The notes: generated by a model from the sequence alone, not told the origin. A stretch of DNA of 64,000 nt from Haliotis cracherodii (GCF_022045235.1 NW_027266330.1:16244001-16308000), one strand, 5' to 3'; positions 961 through 63,790 are shown, numbered from the stretch's first letter. Numbers and translations are program-made.

Positions 961-1176
961 ACTGTCAGAACTCACTCATTCACTGTTATAAGATCCTGGA
1001 TCTTCCTTCGGTCATACTGCTTCAAAATATAAGGTAAATATACGTTTTCCGGAAACCTATTTCAGGGCAATCAGCATGTTTAGCGAACCAAAATCCCTAC
1101 CCACCACCCCCTGAATACCAAATGGTCGGTACCTCAGAGTAACATTTAATGTTGTTAACCTTTAAGATAGACTCGC

Positions 1177-4100
1177 CTGTTTTGGACACCTCTGTATTAC
1201 TTTGCACCCTCAAGATGAGCCAACTTATGCACGGACAAAGCACTGCTCCATACGACAAAGCAACACGGGCGTTGTAAAGATGGCGTTTTTCTGTAAATGT
1301 AAACCAGTGAATATTTCGCGGAGCTCTTGGAGAAATATACACCTTAAACATCGTTCTCTTCTGACAACAAACGAGTGAGTGAGTGAGTGAGTGAGTTGGG
1401 TTTAACGCCGCTTTTAACAGTATTCCAGTTATATCACGGCGTGTCAGCTTAATGTGGGAGGAAAGCCCGAAGTGATGCAGGTCTAAGACGTTTACCACTT
1501 GGTGAAACCCACGAGCACGGGTATGGTGCTAACAAACCTAGAAACATAATCGGGGCGAACCTGGATTCGAACCCACAATCATAGGTTTCTGGCGTGTCCA
1601 GGGGACGCAAATCTGCACAGCGAATCGCGGCGCCTTAGACGACTGGGCCGACCGTGCCCCCTCAACTGAGAGTGAAATATATGTTGTGTAATGGGCGTCT
1701 CATAACCGAAACGTGATTTGGTAAACACTATCTAGTATCGCGGAAAGTTCACTTCGTCGTCCACGTTTCTGTTTTCTAAAACATTCCAAACGATCCTTGG
1801 GTTATCGGCAACGTTTCAGATCATTGGTGATATGATAAATCACAGATTTTGAGAGGTCATTATCAGTGATTCTAATTTGCCTTAAATGACTGATTATGTC
1901 AAAACAGAGAAAGTGCGCAGAATGCAAAACTGGATATACATGTTTCGTGTAAAACTACCAACAGACTCGACATCGGTATACTTTAGTATTGAATGTGTGG
2001 AATGTTAAATGGCGGGTTACTCGGGGGATAAACGACGTGTGTTGTGTACTAAATCGACGAAACAAAACAACTACCGGGCTTCCTGATGTACACCACAACG
2101 CTCCGTAGCACTGCATATGTTAAAAGGATGGAACTCTCTATTGCCGCAAATGCCACATATCCTTAAACAAAAAAAATATGAAAATCACATTGCATATTTA
2201 GCATGGAACTTAAAGATCCCCATATCAATATACAGTTACAATGGTGTATCAATACATCACAGCTACATTTAAGCGGTGAAAATGTTATGGATGCATCACA
2301 TTACTTCAACAATATGACCCCTGCACATTTAACGACACGATTTTACCGTTTGCTAGCGGATGACGTCCATAGTCATAACATAGAACGACCCAGTATACGA
2401 AGAATGCAATACTCCAAAGAAATGACACGCAGCTTCGTAATATCCGTATATCGGTCCTCTCTGGAAAGAATAGAAACAAATCTATGAAATCATGATGATC
2501 GCTTTTAAGTATAAAACCATGTGATATTTTTCTTTCAAATCTAAGGGGCGGTCGGATACCTAGTGGTTAAAGCGTTCGCTTGTGACGCCGAAGACCCGGG
2601 TTCGATTCCCGACATGGGTACAATGTGTGAAGCCCATTTCTAGTGCCCCCCGCCGTGATATTGCTGGAATATTGCTAAAAGCGGCGTAAAACCATACTCA
2701 CTCACTCACTCACTCACTCACTCACTCACTTTCAAATCTAAAATGATCATTTAAAGGTCGAAGACCTCGACAACTCATTATTACACGAAAGGAATTCTTT
2801 ATTCAAACTGTGCAACTGGCCAGCCTTAAAACGAGGTAATGATTATACACGAAGTTTCGTTCGGCTCGATTTGTCAGAATGTATTTACAGTTTGTTTAAC
2901 CCTTATGTGTTTTATAATTCACGAGATGACTTCAAATAATTCATTACAAGGCAACAATCGGGAATGAAAACATACCAGGTCGCCTAATCTTTTTCAATCC
3001 ATTAGGGAAGCGTGTCCAGACGAGCGGAATGATGATAAATTGGATGTATACAAACAGGATGCTGGTGAGAAACAGGTGGAAGCTGAATGTTCCTACAACA
3101 GAACCTCCTGATATATGTTACAGTCAATGTGTAAAATCAGTCAATTTGTAAAATGACTGAAATTTTCATTGAGGCAAGTTAAAAACGTCAAAATATATCA
3201 GTCATTTTACAATTATTTTCCCGTCAGATTCACTAAAAGTTATTGAGAAGTTCAAAGGGCTTAAAAGCATCACAGCATATTTTAGTAAAATCCGCGAGTA
3301 CGGATCTGGTGTTAACAAACATTATCAGGGAAAATCTTGATTTTGAACCCACGATTTGTGGCACAGCAGTTCTGCAGAGCGAGTTACAGCGACCAAGAGA
3401 ACTCCCTTAAATAATTAAGATTTTGAATATACAAAATATAAATCAACAATGGAAGTTCATGCTTTGTCATAAATAAACTAGTTTACCTTTTAAATCTAAC
3501 ACTTCACTATGCACAGTACCAACTTCCATATTTCCAAGAAAACAACGGAATTGCAGTTGACCTTCAACAGTGGGAAGATATGTAAGCTGGCTTGTCGTGT
3601 GATATGCACACGAAACAAGGCGAGGTTGTGATTCACTGACGCCATCTTTGATGCTAAGCCAGTGGATTTCATGTGTAGAATTCTTCATCTCCCACTGCCA
3701 GACATGTGCCTTGCTGCCTTCAACAGCTTCACAGTAGACCGTGATTGAAGTCAGGACCTGGTGTATATCATGTACTGGATCTTTTCTGATGGACGTTGTG
3801 GGCTCAACTGGAATGAACGGTTAAATGTCCAGTAGTTTGGTTTGTTGGTTTGTTGTTTTACGCCGCACTCAGCAATATTCCAGCTATATGACGGCGGTCT
3901 GTAAATAATCGAGTCTAGACCAGACAATCCTGTGATTGATATCATGAGAATCGATCCACGCAATTGGGATCGATGACATGCTTCAACCAAGTCAGCGAGC
4001 CTGACCACCCGATCCGGTTAGTCGCCTCGTACGACAAGCATAGTCGCCTTTTACGGCAAGCATGGGCTGCTGAAGACCTTTTCTATCCCGGATGTTCACG

Positions 4101-5361
4101 GGTCTACTGTGTTTGTGTATAAGCCCCGAAATATATGTATGTAAGTTATAGGTAACGTGTCAAAAGCAACTTACCATGAAACTCAATTGCTGGTGAATAC
4201 GGAAGGTTTAAATAAGAAGTATGTCGATAGTTTCTCTTCATCCCAAACACTTCACACTGAATCTTGGTCACTTCTGTACAATTTAATCTGATGGTGGCAG
4301 TAATGATATTTTCATCAATCTTGTAAACATTCTCAACTCGGACTGTAGTATTCGGGACAGCTGCGAGGATTCCGTCTTTACCCATGTGAACTATCTGAGA
4401 TCCATTGTACACAATACTCCGAGTGTACACCTGGTAAAACTGTCCTACGTGACTGCTTCCATTACACGTCACATTGGCAACAGTGCAGGTTGTGACACTG
4501 ACTTTTAAAACTGAAACATAAGCATTTAAGCAAATATACAGTTTTGGTTCGACAGCATTCGGATCATACAAATAATATAATGTTGTTTGTTGGTTTGTTT
4601 GTTGGTAAGGGCCGCATTGAGTAATATTCCAGCTATATGTAGGCGGTCTGTAAATAATCTGGACTTGACAATCCAGTGATTGATATCATGAGCATCAATC
4701 TACGCAATTTGGATGCGATGATATGCATCAGCGAAGTCAGTGAGTCTGACCACCCGATCCCGTTTGTCGCCTCTTACTGAAGATGAATCTGAAGTGAAAG
4801 AGTTTAGTTTTATCTGAGCAGTGTTTCAGTTGAATCGTGTCAGCTGAAGTCAAAGACCAAAGTATTGTCAGTTATGAGTTTGGTGATTGATAAACAAAAC
4901 CAGGGTTCAAAATCGGGACGAATCGAAAATTCGAGCCATGGGATTCAGATCCTGGAACGACTAAGGACTCAATTTGTTGGGCTACCTGCCCCCTCCAGCC
5001 CGAGGAAATTCCAGGTCAGAATACGTCCCGATCAACCTATGCTTGTCGTTAGAAGCGAGCAAATGGATCGAGTGGTCAGACTCGTCGACTTGGTTAACAG
5101 CGTGTCATCGTCCCCGAAGGTGTAGGTCGTTGTTCACAATATGAATCACTAGGTGTTCTGGTGAAGACTCGATTATTTACAGGCCGCCGAGTGCAGTCAG
5201 CTGAGTGCAGCGTTAAACAACAAACAAACAAACCCGCTCCCGAAAAACAAGTCGATAATTCAAGGTTACGATCTGTCTGTGAAAGATAAACAGCTGTTAT
5301 ACATACCTAATGTCATCATGACACAAGACAGCAATGCCTCCAGCTGAGTCTTGTATTTCAT
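1177..5361 (-). CDS. Gene A: 2xIg + multi-pass membrane protein (pentaspan family), 3' end missing from window
   Basis: Exons (minus): 5361-5307 signal MKYKTQLEALLSCVMMTL; 4510-4175 Ig1 (..CTVANVTC..RLNCTEVTKIQCEVFG..IEFH); 3807-3487 Ig2 (..ITVYCEA..VWQWEM..FRCFLG); 3092-2976 TM1 GTFSFHLFLTSILFVYIQFIIIPLVW..RRP; 2460-2347 TM2 ERTDIRILRSCVSFLWSIAFFVYWVVLCYD; 2161-2075 TM3 GYVAFAAIESSILLTYAVLRS; 1290-1177 TM4 EKRHLYNARVALSYGAVLCPCISWLILR. All introns phase 1 and exon-by-exon homologous to genes D and E. The TM5 exon was not found, so it presumably lies left of position 1. Confidence 0.88.
1373..1661 (-). mobile_element. SINE family 2 (tRNA-like head, ~290 bp, (ACTC)n tail)
   Basis: A-box/B-box-like head (GGTTCGAATCC) and TTCCTCCCAC core. 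Other copies at 6787-7040(-), 21714-21950(-), 26388-26666(-), 30216-30499(-), 46374-46653(+), 51177-51454(-), 53862-54105(-); partial copies at ~8395-8570 and ~14530-14668. Confidence 0.85.
2545..2730 (+). mobile_element. SINE family 1 (tRNA-derived, ~170 bp, (ACTC)n tail) with target-site duplication
   Basis: GGGGCGGTCGG..TAGTGGTTAAAGCG..GGTTCGATTCCC head; direct repeat CTTTCAAATCTAA on both flanks. Confidence 0.9.
3836..4104 (-). mobile_element. SINE-like family 3 (~260 bp, Nin/Deu-like core TGCTTGTCGTAAGAGGCGACTAA, (AAAC)n tail)
   Basis: Near-consensus copy; more than 15 copies in the window, including degraded ones at 4585-4780, 5030-5232, 27433-27663, 27833-28058, 28502-28650 and 31460-31659. 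Confidence 0.85.
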
Positions 5362-19200: not shown

Positions 19201-22200
19201 ACATTTGATAGGACCTCCGGCGTCTTTTCTTGTGACAGTATATTCTATAGAGCTTGAACACATGTGTAAACATTCAGATTCATCGTATGTGCAATTGTTC
19301 GATACATTGTGGTTGTTTTGATTTGGCAAAAACCACGACCAATCGGCTTCCTCGTAGTTCTTCAATACAGAGCAGGTAATGTTGACCACTTCGCCTTCAG
19401 TGTAGGCAGGTCTGTCCGGGGTCACTGTGAGGGAAATACCACTTGGGTCACCTAGATATAACAGAAGGTTTCACTTTCAGTCATCTGTTGTTCAAGTAGG
19501 AAATATAATATAACAGTGCCATTAAGAATTGACAGCCATACAACAACCAGCTAAATCGCGGGGTAAAATAGTTCCTCAAAAAGAGAGGTGACATGGGCGT
19601 ATGGATGCACAACTTGCTCTTCCGAAACATCTTACGCAGCAGATGTGTTCAAATCATATCATCAGATGAGAAAGGTCTGTAAAGAACTACCTCAGTAAGT
19701 CAGTCACAATGACAGCGCGTCGTAATACAATCACATCAAGTACAAGACGTCAAAATGGCCGACACGATAAACGTGACGGGAAAGATTTCCGAAGTTGTTA
19801 ATGAACGTGTGGCGGCTACATGTGTTAGTCATCATTGATCAAATGGCCGATCATTGAAAGGTGAATAAAGATGCGTCAAACAGACACAAAGGTAAATTCA
19901 TAGATTGCTGGAGACGGTCAATGTCAGCCTAGGCACGGATCGAGTCGATACTACGATAGTTTAGATGTGCATTTCTTCGTTTGTTCATTAGGATGGGCCG
20001 TAGCGAGAATATTCGTGAACAATCGTGCAGTCACGGTCTCTGATATTTCTCAATGTATACTGAAAGGCTGAGACCAAGAATGAAGGTTCTAAATGATCAG
20101 AAAGAACGCTTATTCATGTTTTCGTGCTAGGGAATTCCCAGGGGATTCCCCAGGAATGTGGATGTAGTCCGTCAGTGTTTACGTCATTTCAAGAACACGG
20201 GCTCGTGGAAAACGTATGAACGTCAAATTGTGTCGTTCATAAACTTCAATAAACGTCAATTTCGCGGTCATGTGACCGACCTCTCGTCCCGCAGAAAAGC
20301 CGTATATCGTGTTAACTTCAAATTAAAAAAATATTACAAAAAAAGAAATACTATGGGTCACTTCTATAAAAGTAAACGCCATAATATTTTCATTCACTGG
20401 TAATACATTATCTTCCCGATTATCATTCGAGTTCACTCGCTTGCAAGGCATTGGTGTACTTGTGACGTTATCTTTGTTTAGTGAGTGAGTGAGTATGGTT
20501 TTACGCCGCTTTTAGCAATATTCCAGCAATATCACGGCGGGGGACACCAGAAATGGGCTTCACACATTGTACCCATGTCGGGAATCGAACCCGGGTCCTC
20601 GGCGTGACGAGCGAACGCTTTAACCACTAAGCTACCCGACCGCCCCTATCTTTGTTTAAACAGACAAGCGGACACACGCCTCCAGAGACAGCGAAGAAGT
20701 GTTGTATTGTCGTTGACGTTTTGAGTATCAAATTCTAGTTTGTTTGTTTGTTTGTTGTTTAACGCCGCACTCAGCAATATTCCATCTATATGACGGCGGT
20801 CTGAAAATAATCGAGTCTGGACCAGACAATCCAGTGATTAATATCATGAGCATCGATCCACGCAATTGGGATACGATGACATGCATCAACCAAGTCAGCG
20901 AGCCTGACCACCCGATCCCGTTAGTCGCCTTTTACTACAAGCATAGTCACCTTTTACGGCAAGCATGGGTTGCAGAAGACCTATTCTACCCCGGAATCTT
21001 CAGGGGTCTCAAATTTACACTGCAAATTTACACAAAGTAAACTTCGAAATTTATGTAATTTTTGAAAACGAGTAATCGATGACATATATCCCTTAATCTT
21101 TTGTGAATGTTCTAAACATACTACCAATGTCTTATAAAAAAATATCAATTCTACGTGACGAATACTATTTGTACCTCTCCAAAGTGAAGTCTAAAAACCG
21201 TGTCCTGGAATTCATGTGGTAATTCTTTAGAACATTTTAACATCACTGACTAAAGGCCACATACATTATATTTGACGAATGCATGTACATGCTAGGGCCT
21301 CTAAGCCTTAAATCTAACTCATTATAAGGAGATATCAAAAGGCTGTGATCCAATGCATATTTGACATTTGGGTTGTGTGTAGTGCAATTCTACCTCGATA
21401 ATGTACTCCTGCAAATGCACTTATACAAAAGCACTTTTCAAACTTCCAGTTTACCATGGGATAAACAGACCGTGGGATTCGAGTGGAATGTGATCATGAA
21501 AAGTACCTTTTCTGTGAACTGTTCACTTAATCATGTAATGTGCTATTCGTGAAACTCTAGTATTTGTACTCTAAGACAGATAGAGTATCCGTGACAGTAC
21601 CATAACGTGATAAAAGAGAAACAGTTGCAAGGCCATTTTTATAAATGCTTCTGTTTCAGTTATGACGACACGTTGTTCCTTTCTTTATCAAACCTTAACA
21701 AGACGCGGATAATAGTGAGTGAGTGAGTGAGTTAGTTTGGTTAAAGGCCTCATTTAACATAATTTCAGGAAAGCCACGATGCAGGTCTCAGACGTTGACC
21801 AATTTGGTGAAACCCATGAGCACAGGTATGGTGCTGACAAACCTAGAAACATAATCGGGAAGAACCGTGATTCGAACCCACGATCATAGGTTTCTGGTGT
21901 GTCCAAGGGACGTAATGCTACACAGCGAATTGCGGCGCCTTAGACGACGGGTAATTAATAACGATTAATAACGCAAATAATAATCACTGAAGTCCGACAC
22001 ATTCTCAAACAAAACGTCGGGAGGACTCACCCTTGACTTCCAAACGAGATGTAACAGGTCCAAGCTCCATGCTGTTATACACATGTCGAACTGCCATGCT
22101 ACAAGAGTACTCTCCCTTATCCATACACGTGACGTCATCCAGAGACAATTGAAGAAAAGCAGTGGAAAAAGATTCTGTGGCCACCGAACCATTGGCAGTG

Positions 22201-22934
22201 AACTTTGATTCCGTCATCTCAATGCTTCCATCCTGAAATAAAATAGCCACGGAACTCCCTCCTTTCTTAAGCATTATCGAGTACACCGTGTCCGTCCTCG
22301 AGAGCACCATATCAAGGTGGCATCGTATAGTCACGGGTCGAGAACTGCCTGGACGAATTATCTTCGGCTTGATATCTAGGATGATCTGGCACCCTATAAA
22401 AGCATAAAACAATATGCAATCAGAATGAATTGACACGGTATAACTAACAACAAACGTAATGTATCACAAGCCACTATTTACATAAAAGTGAAATACGCCA
22501 ACATATATTTTTCGCTCGATTGTTGTTAAACACCGCACCCAACAATATTCCAGCTATCTTACGGCAAGCTGTAAATAATCAAGTCTGGACCAGACAATCC
22601 AGTGATTGACATCATGTGCGTCGATCAACGCAATTGGGATCGATGACATGCATCAACCAAGTCAGCGAGCCTGACCACCCGATCCCCTTTGTCGCTAGTC
22701 GTCTTTTACAGCAAGCATTGGTTGCTGAAGTCCCATTCTACCCCGGATCTTCACGGGTCTAATGGTGTCTGAAACAAACATCGACGATAACATTGATAAA
22801 CATTGAATATTGTAAGCATTGTTTTAGCGTTTGAAATAATCTATAGCTATCGACTTAGCTTTTTTGGAAAACGTACCAGCGAAACCCCACTCAGCGAGTA
22901 CGACGTAGAGTATTGTCCGAAAAAAGTACTCCAT
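16220..22934 (-). CDS. Gene C: single-pass type I receptor, V-like Ig + second Ig + S/T-rich stalk + TM + Tyr-motif tail (~400 aa); paralogue of B
   Basis: Exons (minus): 22934-22877 signal MEYFFRTILYVVLAEWGFA; 22393-22031 V-like Ig (363 nt, same length as in B; IRCHL..VYSIMLK..VTCMDKGEYSCSMAVR..LGPV); 19451-19140 Ig2 (VNITCSV..DWSWF..IKCLNG); 18980-18930 and 17752-17678 stalk; 17149-17057 TM (GLMVLYVLVSAFAVILVFTLLHLFL); 16470-16220 tail DRKCKC..AAYLHP..EPIYEEIE*. All phase 1. Confidence 0.88.
17278..17444 (-). mobile_element. SINE family 1 copy
   Basis: High identity to the family; TGGGATCAGTT direct repeat on the flanks. Confidence 0.88.
17978..18140 (-). mobile_element. SINE family 1 copy
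   Basis: High identity to the family. Confidence 0.88.
20480..20646 (-). mobile_element. SINE family 1 copy
   Basis: Consensus-like; TATCTTTGTTTA direct repeat on the flanks. Confidence 0.9.
20738..21008 (-). mobile_element. SINE-like family 3 copy
   Basis: Full length. Confidence 0.85.
21714..21950 (-). mobile_element. SINE family 2 copy (degraded)
   Basis: Homologous to 1373-1661. Confidence 0.75.
22515..22760 (-). mobile_element. SINE-like family 3 copy (variant subfamily)
   Basis: Homologous to 11945-12200. Confidence 0.85.
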
Positions 22935-26387: not shown

Positions 26388-26666
26388 TAGTGAGTGAGTG
26401 AGTTGGGTTTAACGCCGCTTTTAACAGTATTCAAGTTATATCGCGGCGTGTCAGTCTAATGTGGGAGGAAAGCCCGAAGTGATGCAGGTCTCAGACGTTT
26501 ACCATTTCGGTGAAACCCACGCGCACGGGTATGGTGCTGACAAACCTAGAAACATAATCGGGGCGAACTGGGATTCGAACCCACAGTCATAGGTTTCTGG
26601 AGTCCCCAAGGACGCAATTCTGCACAGCGAATCGCTGCGCCTTAGACAACTCGGCCACCCGTGCCG
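26388..26666 (-). mobile_element. SINE family 2 copy
   Basis: High identity to the family. Confidence 0.85.
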
Positions 26667-26906
26667 TCCCAGTGAGGAATGTCACCTAGAACGTTATCAG
26701 TACTGCGTCAGTTTGACCTGTGGGTTTTGACTGACTGTATTTTTTTACCTATGAACTTTCTATGCTACAGTTAAATATAACTATCGCGACTCTTGTGTAT
26801 AATGACGGCCTAAAATTCGTTCCTGATTCTGTGTTGAGGTGACTCACGTTATTGTTCACATACAATAAATGTATTACATGTGAGAGTGTTCTGTGCTTCA
26901 GACGGC

Positions 26907-29900
26907 ATGGAAATGACACGATTTGCAACGGGTTTGACAGCGCTGTATACAATATGTAAGTATGGACAAAATAAGACTAAACCGATAATGTGTCAACACA
27001 ATTACGTCTCAAATATTTCAGACATTTTTGTATGTTTTGTTGTTTAATGGAATGGTTCTGAAATTTCAGTTTGCACAAGTCACCTTACCGCTGGAATCCC
27101 CGTGCGTACCACTGTGGAGTGTCAGGCGTCTAAATATATCAATAGCTATCAGAAGATTTTCTCCATTTCTATTGAAATATTCAACGTGACAGTCGTTCAG
27201 TTGGAAAAAAAGAAAGACCCCGTAGTTGTTCCCAACGACAAATACACCATAAGCAACATTACCGGACAACTAACAGACAATGATGTGTACATCAGAGGAA
27301 CGACTTTCCTAGAGTGTGAACTCGCGAGTACTATATATTGTGTTTTGTATGGCTACTCAGATTCTGCTTACACGCATGTACGATTCAAGCCGGATACTGA
27401 ATTTGATGGTAAGACTATTATGCATCCTGTAAACGTGAAGATCCGGGTCAGAACAGGTCTTTGGCAGCTCATATTTGTCATAACGAAGCCGGGTGGTCAA
27501 GCTCGCTGACTTACATTCTAAAAAGTAATCTTCCATCAGATTCTGGTTAGAATTGGTCTTCAGCAACCCATTCCCTGGATAGCCTGGTCCAGACTCGTTT
27601 ACAAACCGCCGAAATATAGCTTGAATATTGCTGAGTGCGGCGTTAAATAACAAACAAATAAACAAATATATTGTGTTCACCTGTTAATCATTGTTTATAC
27701 ACAGAATTATTTTATAATCTCACATAATAAAATTCCATGTCCAATATTATCATAAATTGAGAAAATAAGAATTTATATGGAATTTAATTTCTGTTTGTTT
27801 ATGTGTTATTGTAATCATTCACTTGCCATTTTACCCCGTGAAGATGGGGTTGGAGTTAGCCTTCAGCAAACCATGCTTGTGATTAGTGGCGAAGGGTTGG
27901 TCAGGCTCACTGACTTGGTTGTCGTATCCAAATTGCGTAGGTCGATGGTCACGATGTCAATCATTGGATTATCTGGTCCAGACTCGGTTATTTCGGTTAC
28001 TCGTCGTCATTATAGGTGGAATGTTGCCGACTGTGTCGTTAAACATCAAACAAACAATTATCCATTTCAGTTACCTGGGAAAATGTCTCTATTACACGAA
28101 GAAGGGTTCTATTCAATGACAGCAGATACATCACACTTCTGACATGCGCATTAGAGGCTGGATCCAGAACAACGGAGATGTGGTGGCAATCTCGTTCGTC
28201 TGACGAGACTTTTTTAAAACTTGATCCACGTTCATATACTGTCACGAGAAGAGTCGGACCTGGTTGCCATGTGCACGTGCTCAGTGAACTAAGACAGGAG
28301 GCAGGCGAAGGGCAAACGCAGGTCAAGTGCATGTTTGGAGCATTTGAAGTGGGATCAGTCGCAGTTGGAGAAACTAACCAAGGTACCAACTATGCCTCAA
28401 CTTGCATCACGTTACCTCCAACTTGTTTTCAAAACCAGTAACAAATAGACCTACTGCATCAGATATATATATATACACACACATACACACCCATATATAT
28501 GGACCCGTGAAGGTCCGGGGTAGAATAGGCCTTCAGCAACCCATGCTTGCCGTAAAAGGTGACTAACGGGATCGGGTGGTCAGGTTCGCTGATTTGGTTG
28601 ATGCACGTCATCGATCCCAATTGCGTGGATCGATGCTCATGATTTCAATCATATTAGCATGTCAGCTTGATGCGGGAAGAAAGCAAGACTCACTCTGTTA
28701 CAGAAAATGTATTGACTGTTATGTCGTGTATGAGCTGATCATGTTATATTGAAAAAAAGGAATATACAGTCAAATACCGTTGTGTCAAACTTACGGTTGT
28801 CTCAAAGTAAATTCTTGGTCCCTGCGTATTCCTTTTTTATTCATCATTTTTGGTTGTGTCGAACTAGTGATAACCCGAAGTATTTACGCATGTCCCTTCA
28901 ACTTCGACACAACGATGTCTGACTGTACATGAATTCCTTCATGTTTCCGTTACACGATACACACTTGCATTCATGCTTACTGAAATAAAATGATTTACTT
29001 TACAGAACCTGACAATATACTTAGTTCCCATCTTTTCCTATCGACGGGGTTCTTGGTGTACCCACATTTTGTCATCCTGCCACCTTTCTGTGACTTTCTA
29101 CTGATGAAAAACATCATTCCGCAAAATTTCCGAGATCCAAGTAAGACGTTTTATTTCTTTGTGACACCATGCAAGTATTCACATTGACCGTGACTAAGTG
29201 AGTGAGGTAATATTTCACTCTCTATCCAACTAACGACGATAACATTTGATATATGTGCTAAAATTCTATTGTGAATAGCAACAGCCTTATATACGTACAA
29301 TTAAGTTCAATGGCGGAAAGTCTACAGATCTGCTAGTTGAAATTGTAATCTTTTAGGCACCATCAAACATGGGTGTATTCTTTTTTTGCCAGGCAGATTA
29401 GTTGTATTCCGTGTAAAGTTTTGATATCTGCAGAGTACATGTTAGGATGTGTCCCTTGGGAGTATTGACTATATGTCCATTTTTGGAGACAACCAGGTTG
29501 CAAATTTTAGACTGTAGTGCTGATATTTCTGTCGGAAAGTGAAGTGAAATCACCTATAAAACTACGTATTGCGATAATGGATTGTGAGTGTTTTTTTACT
29601 CCATGAACTCACATCACAATATTTCAGAAACAACGAAAAGTAGAAAGCGCAGAGCCTGGATTTCATTAATCACCGGCATTATCTTTCTTGTATGGTGGAT
29701 AATTGTGATTCAAGGTGCTCACACATCAGGTAATTGCATTTTGAAGTAAATTATTCTTTACGTAAGTTGTATAATGTTTTCTTTATCCAAGAGTTGGAGT
29801 CGGAGTTGACAACACTGATAAAATTTGATTTCCTGTTTTATTGAGACGATGTGGTGACAGGACACTTTCTGTAATCGATATATCATACATTGATTGAACT

Positions 29901-31070
29901 ATGTTTAATATTTCAATTTATTTATTTCCAGGTTACGTTTGTTTTTTGGTTATGGAATCATTGTTCTTCATTCTTTATGCTGTTGTCCGACTGCTGCCTG
30001 AAAGGTTCGAGAAAGACGGTAAGTAATAAGAATTACCGGTAATACACGCGTGTATGGGTTACTGACAAATCTTCACATATTGTGTTTTTTATACCTCTTC
30101 GCAGTTGTTAGGTAATACCATTGCGGCATTCTCATGGTATCATATGTAAAATATTACCTTATACCCCACTACCGAATTAAGGGATCAACAAGTCAGGTCC
30201 GGGTTATTAATATTAGTGAGTGAGTGAGCGAGTTGGATTTAACGCTGCTTTTAACAGTATTCCAGTTATATCGCGGCGTGTCAGCTTAATGTGGGAGGAA
30301 AGCCCGAAGTGATGCAGGTCTCAGACGTTTACCACTTCGGTGAAACCCACGAGCACTGGTATGGTGCTGACAAACCTAGAAACATAATCGGGGCGAACCG
30401 GTATTCGAACCCACAATCATAGGTTTCTGGCGTGCCCAAGGGACGCAACTCTGCACAGCGAATCGCGGCGCCTTAGACGACTGGGCCACCCGTGCCCCCG
30501 TTATTAATATTAACTGACACATCGTAAATAGAACAAAGCATCCTACTTCTTGTTTAATCTGTTATTATTTGTAAATGATCATGATCTGGTTCTGCATTTG
30601 ACTATCATTGTAGGTGAAAGACTTCTCTACAACTGTAGAGTATCACTATCCTGCGGAGCTGTCATAACTCCGGGTATCTGTTGGGTGATGATCAGAACTC
30701 AGATGCAACTAGCGTTCTCCATACAGGGTATTATATCTGTTACAGCTGTCATAACTCCGGGTATCTGTTGGGTGATGATCAGAACTCAGATGCAACTAGA
30801 GTTCTCCATACAGGGTATTATATCCAGAGACTATCATAAAGTCGTAGTCTGGACTAAATACATATGATTATTGTATTAAAATATTATATATAACTGTAAT
30901 ACAATATTAACACATGTGAACATATTCCTACGCCATTTATGTGCATATACTGAAACTTATATGTTATGTTTGCAGAATGTGTCTGGTTGGTGGTGACAGC
31001 CATTTCACTCATCACCTTCGTTTCTGTTTCCAACAAGAGAGAATGGAAGTCATGGGACAAGCGCAGTTGA
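26907..31070 (+). CDS. Gene D: 2xIg + five-TM membrane protein (~410 aa), complete
   Basis: Exons: 26907-26955 signal MEMTRFATGLTALYTI; 27070-27408 Ig1 (VECQ..FLECELASTIYCVLYG..TEFD); 28071-28382 Ig2 (LLTCAL..MWWQ..VKCMFG); 29006-29140 TM1 SSHLFLSTGFLVYPHFVILPPF; 29628-29729 TM2 RRAWISLITGIIFLVWWIIVI; 29932-30018 TM3 GYVCFLVMESLFFILYAVVR; 30614-30727 TM4 ERLLYNCRVSLSCGAVITPGICWVMIR; 30976-31070 TM5 + tail ECVWLVVTAISLITFVSVSNKREWKSWDKRS*. Total 1233 nt, in frame, all phase 1. Confidence 0.9.
28765..28928. mobile_element. Tc1/pogo-type MITE
   Basis: TA-CAGTCAAA...CGTTGTGTC and GACACAACG...TCTGACTG-TA terminal inverted repeats. Confidence 0.65.
30216..30499 (-). mobile_element. SINE family 2 copy with TSD
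   Basis: GTTATTAATATTA duplicated on both sides. Confidence 0.9.
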
Positions 31071-32445
31071 TTGTCTTACAGATTATCTAAGGCACTACAT
31101 ATGTACATTTTGATCTGAGCAAGACATGTAGATATAATCCATGTCACGAGGCTTAATATCGTGTATCATTTTCTTTGTAAAAGATATTCGATTAATACAG
31201 ACTAACAGTCATAACTGTGGCTAAAATTAAATGAATTCCCTTTTACGAAACGTCATCTTGCCTGGCGTTATACCACTGTATGGGATCGCGTTTTTATGTA
31301 TTATGTGTTAATAACTGCTCCTTCTCAATCGAATGTTCAGTGACTGTCTTCTTATTACAATGTACAATTACATCAATTCACAGTGGATTATGCACCAGCT
31401 GCAGGGAGAACACACATGTTGTTATGTTCACTAAACTCGGAACTATCACCAATACATACTGAAGATTCCGGGGTAGAATAGGTCTTCAGGAACCAATATT
31501 TGTCGTAAAAGGCGACTATGCTTGTCGTAAAGGGCGACTAACGGGATCGGGTGGTCAGACTCTGGTCCAGGCTCGATTATTTAACAGACCGCCTTTATAT
31601 AGCTGGAATATTGCTGAGTGCGGCGTTAAAAAACAAACAAACAAACAAACAAACAAACCTATTTTTTTCCTAAGTTTTATTCTAATATACAACAAGTGTC
31701 AGTTTCTAAAATAACCCAGGTCGATTATTCACATCCGCATTTTATTTTACAGAAACTGTGTACAGTCTGTTTTATTATTCTTTGTCCGGCACTTGTATGG
31801 AGAGGTCTCATTCCAACATAACGATATAGACAGTTATTGTTGCATTGGGAGTAATAAAATATTTTTTTAATATAATGGCTAGTGTTATCGATGCGATTAA
31901 GCAATCCGGTAAACTTGGTATCACGATCCGATAAATATGCAAATGAGGTCATGAAATCCCCTGGCAAGAACTAACTTTTAGTAAGCTCTGTACAACGATG
32001 CCGCGTTTATTTGCTGAAAAACTATTTTAAAACGTTCCCTCAATGAGAAGATAGCGGTTTCCCAATGAGTGAGTGGTTAAGTGAACAGTCATGTCTGCAA
32101 GTCATTTGGCACTATATAAAAAAATGAGGCAGTTCACTCAGTCTGTATAATCCTACGCGGTTTCTGAACTGACTATAGTGATGAGCAATATGTCTTAAAC
32201 TTCGATGCTCGCATAATACAATATTTAGTTCTAATAGTTAAAACTCATGATACAAAAACAGATCAGGCTAACAATCTCAATATCCTATCGTACCTTAGAA
32301 AGGCTTTCATACTTGTTTGTGTACGCCAGGCTGTTCGAAGTGAATCCTGATAACAGTTATATTCGTTGACAGTCAAACTGTTTCGTCTTTGCAATACAAA
32401 CTTTACCGTACATGCATGGGATCAGTGGTATCACGGTAGATTCAT

Positions 32446-32671
32446 GTTTTGTTTTGTTTGTTTGTTGTTTAACGCCGCACTCAGCAATATACCAGCTATA
32501 TAATGGCGGTCTGTAAATAATCGAGTCTGGACCAGACTATCCAGTGATTGACATCAAAAGCATAGGTCCACGCAATTGGGATTGATGACATGCATCAACC
32601 AAGTCAGCGAGCCTGACCACCCGATCCCGTTAGTCGCCTCTTACGACCTATTCTACCCCGGAGTCTTCACG
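32446..32671 (-). mobile_element. SINE-like family 3 copy
   Basis: Internal deletion; TCACGGTAGATTCATGT repeated on the flanks. Confidence 0.8.
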
Positions 32672-32759
32672 GTAGATTCATGTATGCTGCTGTGGTCAAG
32701 ACAGATGGTTGACAGCAGCAACACATGTACGGCCTGATGCGTCACTACACGACAGAAAT

Positions 32760-33400
32760 CGCCAAGCTGTAGGTAATGGTAAAGTAAACTGGGTTTCCAA
32801 AATTAGACACATTATCGTGTGAACGGGATTTGGTTTTATATGGGATCAACAATGTGTTGCAAATATACCTTTGTTTATAAAGGATTTTTTTGTGAGACTT
32901 AAATTATCGTACCAACAAGACTGGCATTCCGCTATACATGAAAGTTCGAAATGATATTATTATTCTTTGTTTAAGCAAACATTTGGTTTTGAAATGTATA
33001 TTACAAGGCTATCATGTGATACATTTAGAAGTATTATGGCTCGTTTCAGATGTAGTTCTCATCATCTAAGAATTGAATCAGGTAGACATGATAAGGAACC
33101 TAGAGAAGAAAGAGTTTGTACTGTTTGTAAACATGATTATATCGAAGATGAGTATCACTTTATTTTAATTTGTGATTGTTATCAAGTTTTGAGGTCAGAA
33201 TATATATCCTTGAATTATTATGAGTTCCCGACAAGACATAAGTACAATATTTTAATGTCATCCACCAACACATTTACTGTTAAGAAACTATTCTAAAAGC
33301 TATGAATCTAAGGCAAAGTCTGTTGGGATCTCCAACTCCCATCACCACACTGTAACTATTGTATCATGGGCCTATGCCCTACAATACATCTGAATAAAGT
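32760..33400 (+). mobile_element. 5'-truncated LINE 3' end (C-terminal CCHC-like domain)
   Basis: ARFRCSSHHLRIESGRH..REERVCTVC..IEDEYHFILICDCYQVLR, the typical C-terminus of RTE-X / CR1-group ORF2, followed by AATAAA. Confidence 0.85.
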
Positions 33401-33845
33401 GTATAATAACGCCTTTCTTTTTTTCTTTGCCAACGTGAAGCGACTGAAGTATCTAGTTGTTTTAATCGCAAAGGATGCGCTACGCCATTTTGTTTTAATT
33501 TCTATGTTTACAAGGAGCGCGTTCAAGGAAACAACAATGATAAAATCTTGACCTGAGATTTATTGGGTTATTTTCGATATAGGTCAACAGAACATTTTGT
33601 GCACTTCACATGTCGTTCGTTGTCAGCTGTTTTGAAAAAGCTTAGCGGAACATCGTGCAATGCCATTGAACGATATATAGTTTATTCAACCAAAAATGAA
33701 TAATACATTCAGGTACTTCACATGTCATTCACAAGTAGATCCTTTTATTAAAGTCCGTGAGAATATCTAAATGCACTCCTTTCATAAATGATCAGTCGGA
33801 TGTGTTCATGTGTTATGGCAACACGCAAGAACAACTTCATGCACG

Positions 33846-36800
33846 TCAATAACATTTTTCCGGTACTTCCCAATACTTTCCCTCTCGGCTCTTTGAGACG
33901 CAGACGAATCCAGTAAAGCATCCGATCGTCACCAACCAGAAAAAGACCTCTGAAATGTTATGTACACGAGACTGTGTAATGTCAACATATTTCTTTAGAT
34001 GATCTGATCATTATTTTTCCAAAATAATATTAATGTATCACTTTATGAAACAATGCTTTCCAAACGAAATTTGATTTTTTTGTTATCTAACGCCACAATC
34101 AGCAATATTCCAGTTATATGACGGCGGGCTGTAAATAATCGAGTCTGGACCAGACAACCCAGTGATTGACACAATGAGCATCGATCCTCGCAATTGGGAT
34201 ACGATGACATTCATCAACCAAGTCAGCGCCTTAACACCCGATCCCGTTAGTCGCCTCTGACGACAAACATATAGTCGCCTTTTACGGCAAGCATGGGTTG
34301 CTGAAGACCTATGGTGAACAGATGAAGCAAATAAATGTTTACCTACCAAGTCCTATGATGCTAGTGCCTCCATAACACCTGATCATAATCCAGCATATAG
34401 AGGGCGTCATTGTCGCCCCATAGGAAGTGGCTACTCTGATATTGTACAAATATCTCTGACCTGTGAACATGAAATGTATGAGTTAGAAAGGTCTTTGTGT
34501 CCACCTAAAAGCACTCTCCCTGCACACTGTCACCGTTGCGCTGCTTAAATAAAACACCCACAAATATTGACATTGTTATCACATTGTATTGTTTCATCAC
34601 TTGTGATACACAAAGGGTTGGGTCCTTTTTCCCGAACGGACATACAAGGTAAAAGATGTTATTATTTGCAAAAGTCTGTCAAAAAGGATGAGTGTGCATA
34701 AAATTAAATATTTGGGAAATAGTACAACGTTTCGTATACAAAGCCACAATGAACAATAAAGATCTTACGTTTTTTTTCGAAGCGCCTGGACAAGTTTGCA
34801 ATGAACCTCGTGAGGGTGTAGCCAAGTACGAAGACAAATTCGATCACAGCATACATGAAATAACCTGTGTACATGAATACACATGATTAGAAATAGGGAC
34901 AACAAAATCTAACTACAATAATTTGATAATTGAAAACTAATAATTTATATCGACCTGATAGTTTTCTGATGAAACAAAATAACTAACCTAATGATCTGAG
35001 AAGATGGTCTCTTAGAATTATGATCCACCATATGAAGAACGCGAGGCCCACAAGGAATGACATTGCCGTACGAAATCTGCGCATACACAATCGCTCTGAA
35101 AATATGAATAATAACGATTCTTACCTGAAACAAAATCATCATACAAAAATTTGTATGAACACCGATTGGACATGAAGAACAATGACAAGATATTTCAATT
35201 CTTAGTGCATTTTCAAGAACAGGGTACCTTATTTTAAATATATTCTCACCTGGTTTTCGAAATGTTACTTTGTCTCCGAACAGAGCAAATACACATGGCA
35301 AGATGATGAAATGCATGTACACTAACATGCTCGATAGAAACAGATGGGTACTGTGATTATCTGGAAATAGAAACTTAACCGGTGCATATCTAAATAATTC
35401 ATCTATCTTATTACTGGATGATAATGCTTGATTGAGCTATATCTCTTGATAATCGAGATATTAAGAACATCCACACGAACATATGCCCAACATATTCTTA
35501 GAGCCATTGAAATGAAACATGAAAGATATATGAAACATGAAAGATATATATGAAACGTCAACGCGCAAGAATAGCCAATCTCGATTATCGGACGAAACAG
35601 TTTGCATTAGTTGGCAATATAGCGATGAAAATAAAATGAATGGATCACTGGAAATCAGTAATGACACCAGGTGTTCGCGAAAAGGGTAAGTAACATCAAA
35701 ATGTTAACCCGATTTAGTCCTACACTGCAACTTTTCACAGTCATTAATGTCATTATAAATTCTTATAATGTATGTACTAGTCAGTGCATTATAACATTTC
35801 ATAGTTAGTAAGATAAAAAAATGACAAACCCCTGCCAGTTCTGATTGTGAGAGAAGTTGACCTTGACCTATCGTTTTCAGCGATACACTTCAGAGATATG
35901 TCCCCATGTTCTGCGGGCACGTGAACATATTTACTGACAGCATGGTAGGAACACTCTGATAGAGTCACAGTGCTTGCTTGAGGGCTGTCACCAGGAACGG
36001 GTTGGAAGCCTGTGATATCTGAGTGACTGATCATCCATTGCAGTCTAGTTCTGTTAACTCCAAACTGCGCAGAACATATGAACAGCACGACATCACCAAC
36101 GCCGTATGTCTCCTTCACAGGCGTCTGAGTGATTGAAACATTGCTTGTAGCAACTACAACATAAAAATACAAATAGCTATCATTCATTAGGCATTCATAA
36201 AAACAGTACCGTGGATTGCTGAACATATTATTTCAACTCATAACTGCTGCGTTGCATCTGTAGAGAAATATACAACATGCATAGATGGTGCTTCACCACA
36301 GAGTGATGCGTATACCAGATTTTGATCACTTTCACTTAAACATAAGCATATTATAAATAAAAGCAACAAAGCCAGTCAATAACCATAATAAATCTCTGCT
36401 AAGAGAAGAGTCCACTGTACGATATGGACCAAATCTTAAGCACATTTGATTATATACCAGATGTCCGCAAGAAGGTGAGCGTGAAATTGTTTTGAGCAAA
36501 GGTAGCATAATGCTCTTTGAAATCTTCGTGGAAATATTGCGTGATTGCACTGATCAATTCATTAATCAATGATACTTGTGAACATTTGTACCATTTAACA
36601 TCTAACAACATGACAGACAGACATGTACACGTACATTGTGGTCATTCGTCATGACAATGTTCACATAAATTGAATGCGGAAAGAATGAGTTAACTGTGTC
36701 CTACCATTAAATTCCAGCTGCGGCGTGATTGTCAAGTTAGTGTAGGATGTTGGGTTGTATACCATTCCAAATGATTTACATCGAATATGTTGGACATCGC

Positions 36801-38125
36801 TGCATTTGATGTTAAGGCTTGCTCTGAGAATTCCAACTTCATCGGTTATATGTCCAAAAGGACTGGAAACAATTCCACTGGTAACTTGAACATCGACCAT
36901 GTCGTTACTAAAGAACATCAACTGTGTCGTGTTGATAAATAGGTTCATTGAGAAAAGTCTAGAAAGTTGTTCACATTTACACTCGACGTTTACGTTTATG
37001 GCAGGTGCGGTTTTCGCCAGCAACACTGGAAAAAATAGAAGATATATGGCATGGCTAAACATTTTAAAGTTTAACTTCACCTCTGGAAAATATGCTCAGG
37101 GAAATAGTCCCAAAATAGTCCCAAGTGCACCAAGAAACTGTGTACATTTTTTTCTCATAACATTTGCTCATTATAATACAATGCAGGTTATAAAGTTTGA
37201 CATGATATTCCGTTGGTAAATACGAAGGTCGGAATCATTAAAAAGGTCAAGCAGCGTTTAACTTGATGTTTATGCCTTAGACGGGGGCGGTGGTGTAGCC
37301 TAATTGTTACTGTGTTATCTCGTCATGGCGAAGGCCCTGATTCGATTTACAGCATGGGTACAACGTGTGAAGAAAAACCTCCAACCCCTTTCCATATCCA
37401 ATAGAAAAGTCTGCTCAAAGCAGAGTCAATTGTACTATTCCGACTATAGCATGAGCACATGTTTATGGATCACTATTAAATAGTGCTGACACCAGGTGAA
37501 ACCCACCGTGATAAACGGCAGCTTTAACTAGCAAATGAAAGCGACAAAACCCTTTCCATATTCATAAGAATTCTCTGCTTAACACATTTCAATTGAATGA
37601 TATTCAATTTACATTCTGCTACTATTAACCAACTAGTATACCTTGCTCATCATTATTATCACAGCTGGTAGAATAGACCTATGCTTGCCGTAAAAAGCAA
37701 CTATGCTTGTCGTAAATGGCGACTAAAGGGATCGGGTCGTCAGGCTCGCTGACTTGGTTGATGCATGTCATCGATCCCAATTGCGTGGATCGATGCTCAT
37801 GATATTAATCACTGGATTGTCTGGTCCAGACTCGATTATTTACAGACCGCCTGTCATATAGCAGGAATATTGCTAAGGGCGCCGTTAAACAACCAGCCAA
37901 CCAACCAAAATGTTTAAGGCACATTTTAATTCTCTCTTACAGAATGGGTTATGTGTCCTTAAAATCATTGGAGTTATTGTAGCAACTATGCACTTATCTA
38001 AATCAAGGTATTGATATTTCAATGCAATTTAGAGTTTGAATAAACTATTTACATTGTAGATAAGACCAACGATCAAGTTAAACACACTCACGGCAAACAG
38101 CTACACACTTGTAAAATGCCGCCAT
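33846..38125 (-). CDS. Gene E: 2xIg + five-TM membrane protein (~403 aa), complete; paralogue of A and D
   Basis: Exons (minus): 38125-38092 signal MAAFYKCVAVC(LLLAKTAPA); 37025-36705 Ig1 (VECK..IKCSDVQHIRCKSFG..LEFN); 36153-35830 Ig2 (LFICSA..LQWMI..LKCIAE); 35360-35250 TM1 STHLFLSSMLVYMHFIILPCVF; 35095-34988 TM2 RFRTAMSFLVGLAFFIWWIIILR; 34864-34769 TM3 GYFMYAVIEFVFVLGYTLTR; 34460-34347 TM4 QRYLYNIRVATSYGATMTPSICWIMIR; 33949-33846 TM5 + tail EVFFWLVTIGCFTGFVCVSKSREGKYWEVPEKCY*. Total 1212 nt, in frame, all phase 1. Confidence 0.9.
34085..34311 (-). mobile_element. SINE-like family 3 copy
   Basis: Homology to the family. Confidence 0.8.
37665..37908 (+). mobile_element. SINE-like family 3 copy
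   Basis: Homology to the family. Confidence 0.8.
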
Positions 38126-62600: not shown

Positions 62601-63544
62601 CTAAATCGGCAAGCCGAGCTTTTGGTGTTTTATGTACAAAATATTTTGATGCTGGGGGTTCTACTTATGCAATTTACACTAAATTGTATGAATCCTTGGT
62701 TCAGCCTTTTATGCATTATGGTACTTCCATCTGGGGGTTGTATGAACATAAAAAGTTAAACACTCTGCAAAACAAAGCATGTAAATTCTTCCTCGGCCTT
62801 AGACGTAATGCGTCAAATGTCGCCGCCAGGGGAGACATGGGTTGGAAATCATGTGTCACTAAGCAACGCATAGAAGTATTTCGTTTATTCTTCCGCCTTA
62901 ACAGTATGGAAATTACAAGATTGCCCCGTGTCATTCATGCTTGGTCAAGTAAAAGAGGGCGCTCATGGAAAAAGGAGGTTTACAAGCTAGCTTGAAACTT
63001 AAACGTCGTCGACTTGATCGATGTCCATTCGATGACACGTGGCCAGTTCACTCTCATTAAGCAAAAATTATTTCAATTGGATGAAACTGTTTGGTTTTCA
63101 GAGCTGTGTAATGATGCTAATAACCCTAATGGTAATAAGCTGAGGACCTATAGATTGCTTAAGAAGGATCTAGCGCCCGAGCCCTATGTCTTATCAAATT
63201 ATATCCATAGAAACACCTGAAAATATTTGGCACTTTTACGCAGTGGCAGCCTCCCCATTAACATTGAAAAAATGAGGTACAGTCGTCCCCCTGTCCCCCT
63301 TCAGGATAGAACTTGCCCTTTTTGTTTTAACTCAGTAGAGACTGAGGTCCACTTCTTAATTGATTGTTACATGTATGATGATTTACGTTATGATGTAATG
63401 AACGCTATGTGTGAATGTATGCCAGATTTTAAAAACTTATCTTCAACCGAGAAATTTATAACATTACTCAGATGTGAACACGGGTGTTACACTCTTTGTA
63501 AGCTAATTGATCAAATGTTCCAAAGACGTTTGTCACTCATTTGA
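59631..63544 (+). mobile_element. Non-LTR retrotransposon (LINE; ORF1 coiled-coil + APE endonuclease + RT + CCHC), inactivated
   Basis: ORF1 59631-~60257 (coiled coil, VIKNLP..RPGIVIV). APE motifs SGGVGFLI, CYLPP, CGDFNAR, GRSVVDY, PDHS. RT motifs KAAGID, YRGISL, QNGFR, KAFD, GLKQGCLVSPLLF, LYADD. C-terminal RTCPFC..ETEVHFLIDC. Frameshifts near 60055, 60510 and 62270 and stops near 62995 and 63220. The clade is probably RTE-X / CR1-group, but this is not resolved. Confidence 0.93.
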
Positions 63545-63646: not shown

Positions 63647-63790
63647 NNNNNNNNNNNNNNNNNNNNNNNNNNNNNNNNNNNNNNNNNNNNNNNNNNNNNN
63701 NNNNNNNNNNNNNNNNNNNNNNNNNNNNNNNNNNNNNNNNNNNNNNNNNNNNNNNNNNNNNNNNNNNNNNNNNNNNNNNNNNNNNNNNNN
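63647..63790. other. Assembly gap (N run) followed by (TG)n-rich low-complexity sequence
   Basis: Run of Ns. Confidence 0.99.

What the first reader, a model, noticed from the sequence alone, without database searches (positions are those of the whole stretch)
26907..38125. A family of signal peptide + 2 Ig + five-TM proteins, one helix per exon (genes D, E, and partial A)
SEEN: after two Ig exons come five short phase-1 exons, each with one hydrophobic segment. Conserved motifs in A, D and E: TM1 HLFL(T/S)..VYx(Q/H)F(I/V)I(I/L)P; TM2 R...S..........W; TM3 GY......E......Y...R; TM4 RxLYNxRVxxS(Y/C)GA...PxIxWxxxR. In D and E only: TM5 E.....VT....FVxVS..RExKxW. Loops after TM1 and TM3 and the C-tail are basic, which fits N-out/C-in topology by the positive-inside rule. 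Most of these exons are absent from or off-frame in the ORF track. KNOWN: Ig fused to a five-pass domain is rare; CD47 and its poxviral homologues are the textbook cases. INFERENCE: either a remote CD47 relative or a convergent new architecture. I see no convincing primary-sequence match to CD47 beyond a weak ILFVYIQFII-type resemblance in TM1.
Basis: partly seen in the sequence, partly recalled or inferred. Interest (0 to 1): 0.9.

Follow-up and report, generated by a model that had tools for sequence, protein, structure and literature searches.

The report
Abalone two-Ig, five-helix membrane receptor family
Three neighbouring abalone genes, at least one of them transcribed, encode surface proteins with two antibody-like domains on a five-helix membrane anchor, a design otherwise known only from the vertebrate "self" marker CD47, but I found no sign that they are related to CD47.

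Summary
Genes D (+, 26907-31070), E (-, 38125-33846) and A (-, 5361-1177, with its last exon just outside the window) share one plan. Each has a signal-peptide exon, two Ig exons and five short exons with one hydrophobic helix each. All introns are phase 1, with AG acceptors and GT donors (one GC donor in A).

Spliced contigs from four public runs reproduce gene D's exon chain. One of them is 1811 nt long with no mismatch.

Full-length orthologues of 387-414 aa exist in Haliotis asinina, H. rubra and H. rufescens. All are named "uncharacterized protein". An exhaustive HMMER search and three word-seeded searches found nothing outside Haliotis.

Hydropathy, loop charges and two AlphaFold models agree on a V-like Ig domain, a C-like Ig domain and five helices, N-terminus outside and C-terminus inside.

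No test supports CD47 kinship: no Pfam hit, no match to solved-structure sequences, and no CD47 among the listed fold matches. The membrane part of the models is low-confidence, so remote homology is not excluded.

Verdict: a real, undescribed family that looks restricted to abalone. It resembles CD47 in architecture only, and its function is unknown. Moderately interesting.

This scan had not reported the family on other DNA.

The parts
26907..26955 (+). Gene D exon 1: ATG, signal-peptide start, 16 codons + 1 base (phase 1)
   Evidence: ORF and donor. A contig of run X5 joins 26824-26955 to 27070.
27070..27408 (+). Gene D Ig1 exon (339 nt, V-like)
   Evidence: tttcag acceptor and GTAAGA donor. 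Spliced contigs in X1, X5, X7 and X12.
28071..28382 (+). Gene D Ig2 exon (312 nt, C-like)
   Evidence: Splice sites. Spliced contigs.
29006..29140 (+). Gene D TM1 exon (135 nt)
   Evidence: Splice sites. Spliced contigs. Hydropathy.
29628..29729 (+). Gene D TM2 exon (102 nt); basic stretch KSRKRR precedes the helix
   Evidence: Splice sites. Depth of the X1 contig at 29674 and 29683. Hydropathy 2.5.
29932..30018 (+). Gene D TM3 exon (87 nt) with the conserved intramembrane Glu
   Evidence: ttccag acceptor and GTAAGT donor. The length sum fits the X1 contig.
30614..30727 (+). Gene D TM4 exon (114 nt), the most conserved motif of the family
   Evidence: Splice sites. Contig depth at 30643 and 30653. 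Alignment A1.
30657..30824 (+). 87-bp tandem duplication (1.9 copies, 98% alike) that repeats the 3' half of D's TM4 exon together with its donor
   Evidence: The lengths of the X1 contig fit use of the first donor.
30976..31070 (+). Gene D TM5 exon, basic tail and stop; the 3' UTR runs to at least 31477
   Evidence: tttgcag acceptor. Contig piece 30975-31477.
38092..38125 (-). Gene E exon 1: ATG at 38125, 11 codons + 1 base, GTGAGT donor
   Evidence: The peptide equals the N-terminus of the H. rufescens orthologue P0014.
36705..37025 (-). Gene E Ig1 exon (321 nt)
   Evidence: 95% identical to P0014.
35830..36153 (-). Gene E Ig2 exon (324 nt)
   Evidence: Weak Pfam Ig_3 hit, E 0.011. 93% identical to P0014.
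35250..35360 (-). Gene E TM1 exon (111 nt)
34988..35095 (-). Gene E TM2 exon (108 nt)
34769..34864 (-). Gene E TM3 exon (96 nt)
   Evidence: Found letter for letter in P0014.
34347..34460 (-). Gene E TM4 exon (114 nt)
   Evidence: Found letter for letter in P0014.
33846..33949 (-). Gene E TM5 exon, tail and stop
5307..5361 (-). Gene A exon 1 (ATG at 5361, 18 codons + 1 base, GTATGT donor)
   Evidence: Matches the N-terminus of P0013.
4175..4510 (-). Gene A Ig1 exon (336 nt)
3487..3807 (-). Gene A Ig2 exon (321 nt)
2976..3092 (-). Gene A TM1 exon (117 nt)
2347..2460 (-). Gene A TM2 exon (114 nt)
2075..2161 (-). Gene A TM3 exon (87 nt)
1177..1290 (-). Gene A TM4 exon (114 nt) with a GC donor (GCGAGT). 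A's TM5 exon lies outside the window, beginning 87 bases before position 1 (locus L005)

Best explanation
A, D and E are three tandem paralogues of a family found so far only in abalone (Haliotis). D is shown to be transcribed and spliced; A and E are intact and conserved.

Shown:
- A cleavable signal peptide puts a V-like and then a C-like Ig domain outside the cell. Both carry N-glycosylation sequons.
- A compact domain of about 175 residues with five helices follows, with short loops and a basic cytoplasmic tail of 11-17 residues. The N-terminus is outside and the C-terminus inside.
- Each helix has its own symmetric phase-1 exon.

Inferred mechanism:
- The protein works as a cell-surface recognition receptor.
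- The ectodomain evolves fast (60-69% identity between distant Haliotis species) and binds a ligand in trans or in cis.
- The helix bundle and its cytoplasmic face are better conserved (74-92%). They carry a Glu in TM3, an R.LYN.R motif at the inner end of TM4, a Glu at the outer end of TM5 and an RE(G/W)K.W motif in the tail. This part would associate laterally with a conserved membrane or cytosolic partner and pass on the signal, as proposed for CD47.

It works like CD47 in layout. Membership of the CD47 family is not shown.
For: - Exon models with canonical sites and uniform phase 1 in all three genes.
- Spliced contigs from four runs in four studies match gene D's exon chain. One 1811-nt contig has no mismatch.
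- Full-length orthologues with the same layout occur in three Haliotis species. The window's exons are 89-100% identical to the H. rufescens proteins.
- Five hydrophobic peaks and alternating loop charge.
- Two AF2 models each give two beta sandwiches and five long helices.
- Foldseek matches the ectodomain to V-C two-Ig proteins (TCR gamma, antibody light chains, B7-1; BARF1, CAR, butyrophilins, PD-L1) at E down to 7e-7.
- The ectodomain diverges faster than the membrane exons.
- The neighbouring genes B and C are V-set plus C2-set Ig genes.
Against: - There is no functional datum of any kind: the tissue of expression, the ligand and the partner are all unknown.
- TM4 is only marginally hydrophobic in the E type (about 1.1). 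No dedicated topology predictor was available.
- The AF2 models have mean pLDDT 53 and 66.5, so helix packing cannot be trusted.
- The faster change of the ectodomain could reflect relaxed constraint rather than ligand-driven selection. No dN/dS was computed, because I had no coding DNA from the other species.
Confidence: 0.6

Rival explanations
1. The family is a true but very remote homologue of CD47. On this view an Ig + five-helix 'marker of self' type receptor predates the split of protostomes and deuterostomes, or was acquired by transfer, and gained a second Ig domain in abalone.
For: - Same order of parts and same topology, with a membrane domain of about 175 residues.
- In CD47 exon 2 encodes the IgV and exons 8-13 the tails. 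That leaves five constant exons for the membrane domain (PMC10902115). Here there are five exons, one per helix.
- A nearly invariant Gly sits at the outer start of helix III. CD47's G191 occupies the same kind of position and is one of only seven residues conserved in the poxviral forms (PMC8410850).
- An invariant Cys lies near the outer end of TM4, and two invariant 'extra' Cys lie in the ectodomain. This recalls CD47's C15-C245 bridge.
Against: - No Pfam hit to any CD47 family at E<=10 in 11 members.
- No CD47 chain in the PDB profile search.
- No CD47 in the top 50 rows of Foldseek or VIA-align for either model, and no named CD47-like poxvirus protein in BFVD.
- Two Ig domains instead of one IgV.
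- No Cys in the TM4-TM5 loop of the D and A types.
- No relatives in any taxon between abalone and vertebrates.
- The window's own gene A has Ser at the 'invariant' TM4 Cys position.
Confidence: 0.12
2. The five-helix domain is the working part, and the Ig domains only regulate or tether it. It would be a small ion- or solute-handling unit, or an obligate subunit of one, built around the buried Glu of TM3 and the polar inner end of TM4.
For: - The helix domain is the best conserved part.
- Invariant charged or polar residues lie inside or at the ends of helices: E in TM3, N and R at TM4, E at TM5.
- TM4 is amphipathic rather than plainly hydrophobic.
Against: - No match to any transporter or channel family in Pfam or PDB.
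- A five-helix monomer is small for a transport path.
Confidence: 0.1
3. The genes are decaying copies or annotation artefacts without a protein product.
For: - Proteins are known only from automatic annotation.
- A fourth copy on another contig has a weaker TM4 motif and lacks the tail motif.
Against: - Open frames, canonical splice sites and conserved phase in all three genes.
- Spliced transcripts of D.
- Conservation of the full layout across four Haliotis genomes, with 74-100% identity in the TM exons.
Confidence: 0.03

Closest known systems
CD47 (integrin-associated protein) and the poxviral CD47-like proteins
   Same: - An Ig ectodomain followed by five membrane helices, N-out/C-in, with short loops and a short cytoplasmic tail.
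- A signal-peptide exon, then Ig exon(s), then five exons for the membrane domain.
- A Gly at the top of helix III.
[quoted passage not shown]
   Different: - Two Ig domains (V-like plus C-like) instead of one IgV.
- No detectable sequence or profile similarity.
- No SWF linker motif.
- No Cys in the TM4-TM5 loop in two of the three subtypes.
- Conserved charged residues (E in TM3, R.LYN.R at TM4) that are this family's own.
- Found only in Haliotis.
Two-domain V-C cell-surface Ig proteins (B7/CD80, butyrophilins, PD-L1, CAR, nectins, SYG/Rst)
   Different: Those proteins have a single membrane helix. This family has five and no long cytoplasmic domain.
Window genes B and C (V-set + CD80-like C2-set Ig genes in the same cluster)
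   Same: They lie in the same cluster. C's second Ig exon resembles E's Ig2 weakly (E 4e-4 in a pairwise test). All have two-Ig ectodomains on phase-compatible exons.
   Different: B and C are 38-40% identical to each other but barely alike to A, D or E. C ends in a tyrosine-motif tail (...EPIYEEIE), not a five-helix domain.

Membership tests
CD47 family | Match to the Pfam models of the CD47 membrane region and the CD47 V-set domain (accessions PF04549 and PF08204 recalled from memory) | tested here: not met
   hmmscan of 11 full-length members at E<=10 lists no CD47 family at all. Exon-by-exon scans of the window genes also list none.
CD47 family | Five membrane helices, N-terminus outside, C-terminus inside | tested here: met
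   Five hydrophobic peaks, loop charges 6-9 / 0-2 / 2-9 / 0-2 / 3-5 K+R, and sequons only in the ectodomain. Five long helices in two AF2 models. No dedicated topology predictor was available.
CD47 family | A single N-terminal IgV domain | tested here: not met
   Two Ig-fold domains, V-like and C-like.
CD47 family | Inter-domain disulfide between the Ig domain and the loop after helix IV (C15-C245; PMC8410850) | tested here: inconclusive
   A Cys near the outer end of TM4 and two extra ectodomain Cys are invariant in the 11 public members. The loop itself has a Cys only in the E type. The window's gene A has Ser at the TM4 position. The models are too weak to read pairings.
CD47 family | Helix-bundle fold like the solved full-length CD47 structure | tested here: inconclusive
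CD47 family | Gene structure: Ig exon followed by five exons for the membrane domain, with matching intron positions and phases | not testable with these tools
   The count of five exons agrees (PMC10902115). No non-human CD47 gene sequence was available to compare positions and phases.
Immunoglobulin superfamily | Ig-fold domains recognisable by profile or fold | tested here: met

The most novel reading that the evidence does not exclude
The abalone proteins are genuine, extremely diverged CD47 homologues, or the first sign of an older and wider Ig + five-helix receptor class. If so, the CD47 'marker of self' fold, now held to be unique to vertebrates and their poxviruses, would have a protostome counterpart, sitting in a cluster with Ig receptors that carry tyrosine-motif tails.
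Probability: 0.12. Interest if true: 0.85.

Novelty: new variant of a known kind. Interest (0 to 1): 0.5.

Why it matters
CD47 is described as the only five-helix receptor of the immune system, with a fold seen nowhere else (PMC8410850). A second family that is independent as far as I can tell, and that joins Ig domains to a five-helix anchor, gives a natural comparison: what does such an anchor offer that a single helix does not?

If the family turns out to be related to CD47, it moves the origin of that receptor type far back in animal evolution.

The family also shows a clean case of modular gene building. Every domain and every helix sits on its own symmetric phase-1 exon, next to two-Ig genes with ordinary tails.

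For abalone biology it is a candidate recognition receptor with a fast-changing ectodomain. Its practical weight is limited until a function is known.

Tried and rejected
- Pfam, exon by exon and on full-length orthologues: only sub-threshold Ig_3.
- PDB sequence profile search: best hit SYG-2 Ig at E 0.14, nothing for the helix domain.
- Exhaustive HMMER search of 1.84 billion representatives with the TM4-exon profile: only the three Haliotis clusters, plus two low-complexity false hits, P0004 and P0005.
- Word-seeded searches with the family alignment, with the helix domain alone and with the D-type protein: Haliotis only.
- ESM Atlas on the helix domains: no usable hit.
- Viral contigs: no relative. 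BFVD fold search: generic viral Ig proteins only.
- Fold searches of both models: covered under the membership test; no specific match for the helix domain.
- Own-genome search: all exons of A, D and E, plus one diverged fourth copy on contig C40.
Not robust.
- Literature searches for CD47 in abalone or in invertebrates: nothing relevant.
- Allelic differences in gene D from the read table: 5 non-synonymous to 3 synonymous in the Ig exons, 3 to 3 in the TM exons. Too few to read, and the list was truncated.
I reran it by reference.
- Left out on purpose: I did not stitch the exons into spliced proteins for any search or fold. Exons were searched one by one by reference, and public full-length orthologues stood in for the joined models.
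- The N run at 63647-63790 was left as it is.
Full report
**What is in the sequence.** A scan for phase-1 acceptors and donors then gives one consistent model per gene.

- Gene D (+): 26907-26955 (ATG plus 16 codons and 1 base), 27070-27408, 28071-28382, 29006-29140, 29628-29729, 29932-30018, 30614-30727, 30976-31070 (stop).
- Gene E (-): 38125-38092, 37025-36705, 36153-35830, 35360-35250, 35095-34988, 34864-34769, 34460-34347, 33949-33846.
- Gene A (-): 5361-5307, 4510-4175, 3807-3487, 3092-2976, 2460-2347, 2161-2075, 1290-1177.

Every acceptor follows a pyrimidine-rich tract ending in AG. Every donor is GT, except a GC donor (GCGAGT) after A's TM4 exon. Every internal exon is a multiple of three and starts and ends in phase 1. 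D and E are convergent, with their stops 2.8 kb apart.

**Gene A is complete in the genome.** I fetched the 8 kb before the window (L005). A's fifth helix exon begins 87 bases before window position 1, behind a ctatattgcag acceptor. It reads ...IVFWVIAAPSLVLSIFVSHDREGKDWEKED-stop, which carries the family's TM5 and tail motif. A's last intron holds the minisatellite at 118-954.

**Transcripts.** The run search listed 18 small data sets guessed to be RNA. Each held 0.19-0.31 of the stretch's words, and D's exons make up 0.30 of the stretch.

I laid four of them, from four studies, on 26500-31500.
- Run X1 has one contig of 1811 nt with no mismatch. It lies on 27070-27407, 28070-28380 and 29004-29140, then carries 302 letters that were not listed, then lies on 30975-31477.
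- The three middle exons sum to 303 nt. The same contig's depth (31.1) appears at 29674, 29683, 30643 and 30653, inside the TM2 and TM4 exons.
- Run X5 has a contig that joins 26824-26955 to 27070, which fixes exon 1.
- X7 and X12 show the same Ig1-Ig2-TM1 chain.

Contigs that skip the introns at the predicted sites can only come from spliced RNA, so gene D is transcribed as modelled. A minor form retains the TM1-TM2 intron (29111-29657, depth 6-16 against 31-63).

**Relatives.** Each exon was used by reference.
- A profile of the three TM4 exons (A1) was run by HMMER against 1.84 billion representative proteins. It found three real hits and two low-complexity false ones.
- The three are full-length proteins of 388, 409 and 387 aa from Haliotis asinina and H. 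rubra, named "uncharacterized protein". They correspond to D, E and A and have the same layout.
- Searches with the family alignment, with the helix domain alone and with the D-type protein added H. rufescens and more isoforms, but no other genus.
- The window's exons are 89-100% identical to the H. rufescens proteins, though few are identical. The window therefore comes from a close relative of that species.
- The orthologues' locus numbers and contigs indicate that the cluster is kept together in H. rufescens and H. rubra.
- In the window's own genome (1.18 Gb) a family profile finds every exon of A, D and E. It also finds one further, diverged copy on contig C40. That copy has two Ig exons about 32% identical to the D type. 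It has recognisable TM2, TM3 (with the Glu), TM4 (P..CW...R only) and TM5 pieces, but no tail motif.
- No relative was found in viral contigs.

**Fold and topology.**
- Pfam finds only a sub-threshold Ig_3 match.
- Two AlphaFold2 models built on the 11-sequence alignment have mean pLDDT 53 (E type) and 66.5 (A type; Ig1 blocks 75-87). Both show two beta sandwiches followed by five long helices. In the A type these are 238-266, 281-309, 313-341, 347-376 and 382-406.
- Foldseek matches the ectodomain to V-C two-Ig chains at E down to 7e-7. Examples are TCR gamma, antibody light chains and B7-1 for model 2, and BARF1, CAR, NTB-A, butyrophilins and PD-L1 for model 1.
- Kyte-Doolittle windows give five peaks behind the Ig domains in the D and A types. 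The E type gives four clear peaks plus a weak TM4 (about 1.1).
- Loop charges alternate as the positive-inside rule demands: 6-9 K/R after TM1, 0-2 after TM2, 2-9 after TM3, 0-2 after TM4 and 3-5 in the tail. All N-glycosylation sequons counted lie before TM1.
- Together these support N-out/C-in with five spans. TM4 is the least certain span.

**Conservation pattern.** Positions invariant in the 11 public members include S..LFL....VY..F...P in TM1 and R.P and R..R in the first inner loop. They also include F...W in TM2, and G, E, Y, R in TM3. In TM4 they are R.L.N.RVA.S.GA...P..CW, and at TM5 an E at the start and VS..RE.K.W after it.

Between the window and H. rubra or H. asinina, gene E keeps 60% (Ig1) and 69% (Ig2) identity but 74-92% in the helix exons. 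Between paralogues the Ig exons fall to 22-30%, while TM4 stays at 46-47%. The outside changes fast; the membrane domain and its inner face are held.

[quoted passage not shown] In the CD47 gene exon 2 encodes the IgV and exons 8-13 the tails, which leaves five constant exons for the membrane domain (PMC10902115).

What the abalone family shares:
- the topology and the compact size;
- the five-exon membrane domain;
- a nearly invariant Gly at the start of helix III;
- a Cys near the outer end of TM4.

What it does not share:
- any detectable sequence or profile similarity;
- any listed fold match;
- the single-IgV ectodomain.

There are no intermediate relatives in any other taxon. The structural negatives are weak, because the helix parts of the models are poor and could not be folded alone. 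I rate homology at about 0.12 and file the family as CD47-like in architecture only.

**Most likely function.** The setting is a cluster of Ig genes. B (9242-11124, +) and C (22463-16223, -) are V-set plus CD80-like C2-set genes, 38-40% identical to each other. C ends in a tail with tyrosine motifs.

The layout and the conservation pattern fit a surface recognition receptor. Its variable ectodomain would bind a ligand. Its conserved helix bundle and short basic tail would hold a conserved partner. This step is inference. Nothing here shows tissue, ligand or partner. A role of the helix domain itself in ion or solute handling is a lesser rival. Decay or artefact is nearly excluded.

**Verdict.** The family is real, D is shown to be transcribed, and the layout is conserved across four Haliotis genomes. 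The family is unnamed in the databases and absent from the literature I could search. It is a new variant of a known kind: an Ig-superfamily surface protein with a CD47-style five-helix anchor. Interest is moderate.

Noticed in passing
window 30657-30824: An 87-bp tandem duplication (1.9 copies, 98% alike) repeats the 3' half of gene D's TM4 exon together with its donor site, so a second in-frame donor exists at 30814. Contig lengths fit use of the first donor. One run shows a 'goes back 86' joint, which may be copy-number variation.
   Followed up: partly
window 118-954: A minisatellite lies inside gene A's last intron. It is open in several frames (e.g. NSECVNPNGECL repeats), which could mislead ORF-based gene calls.
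   Followed up: no
G000 contig C40, about 91.8-98.8 kb (L018 5819-6946; L019 1295-4760): A fourth, diverged copy of the family on another contig. It has two Ig exons about 32% identical to the D type and recognisable TM2-TM5 pieces, but a weak TM4 motif and no tail motif. It may be a diverged member or a decaying copy.
   Followed up: partly
window 9242-11124 (+) and 16223-22463 (-): Genes B and C are paralogous two-Ig genes (V-set plus CD80-like C2-set; first Ig exons 40% identical). C's last exon ends ...AAYLHPEDPTDCSMLQNQGLHTEPIYEEIE, and YEEI is the classic Src-family SH2 target (from my own knowledge). C's second Ig exon resembles E's Ig2 weakly.
   Followed up: partly
protein P0012 (H. 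rubra isoform X2, 372 aa): A predicted isoform lacks exactly the TM1 exon. Because all exons are symmetric in phase 1, skipping keeps the frame but would invert the topology of the rest of the protein. It may be splicing noise.
   Followed up: no
window 1171-1177 (- strand): Gene A's TM4 exon ends at a GC donor (G|GCGAGT), the only non-GT donor among the family's introns in the window. The H. rufescens gene model uses the same junction.
   Followed up: partly
window 26500-26666, 27502-27668, 27836-28002, 28504-28670, 30174-30507 and many other places: Copies of short interspersed repeats (frames such as ...GSMTCINQVSEPDHPIPLV...) fill the introns. In the RNA-like runs they reach contig depths of 1e4 to 1e6, so they are abundantly transcribed somewhere in the genome.
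   Followed up: no
window 49487-51175 (+) and 60495-62992 (+): A major-facilitator transporter exon (MFS_1, E 6.5e-17) and a LINE-type reverse transcriptase (RVT_1, E 2.3e-15) lie downstream of the Ig cluster.
   Followed up: partly
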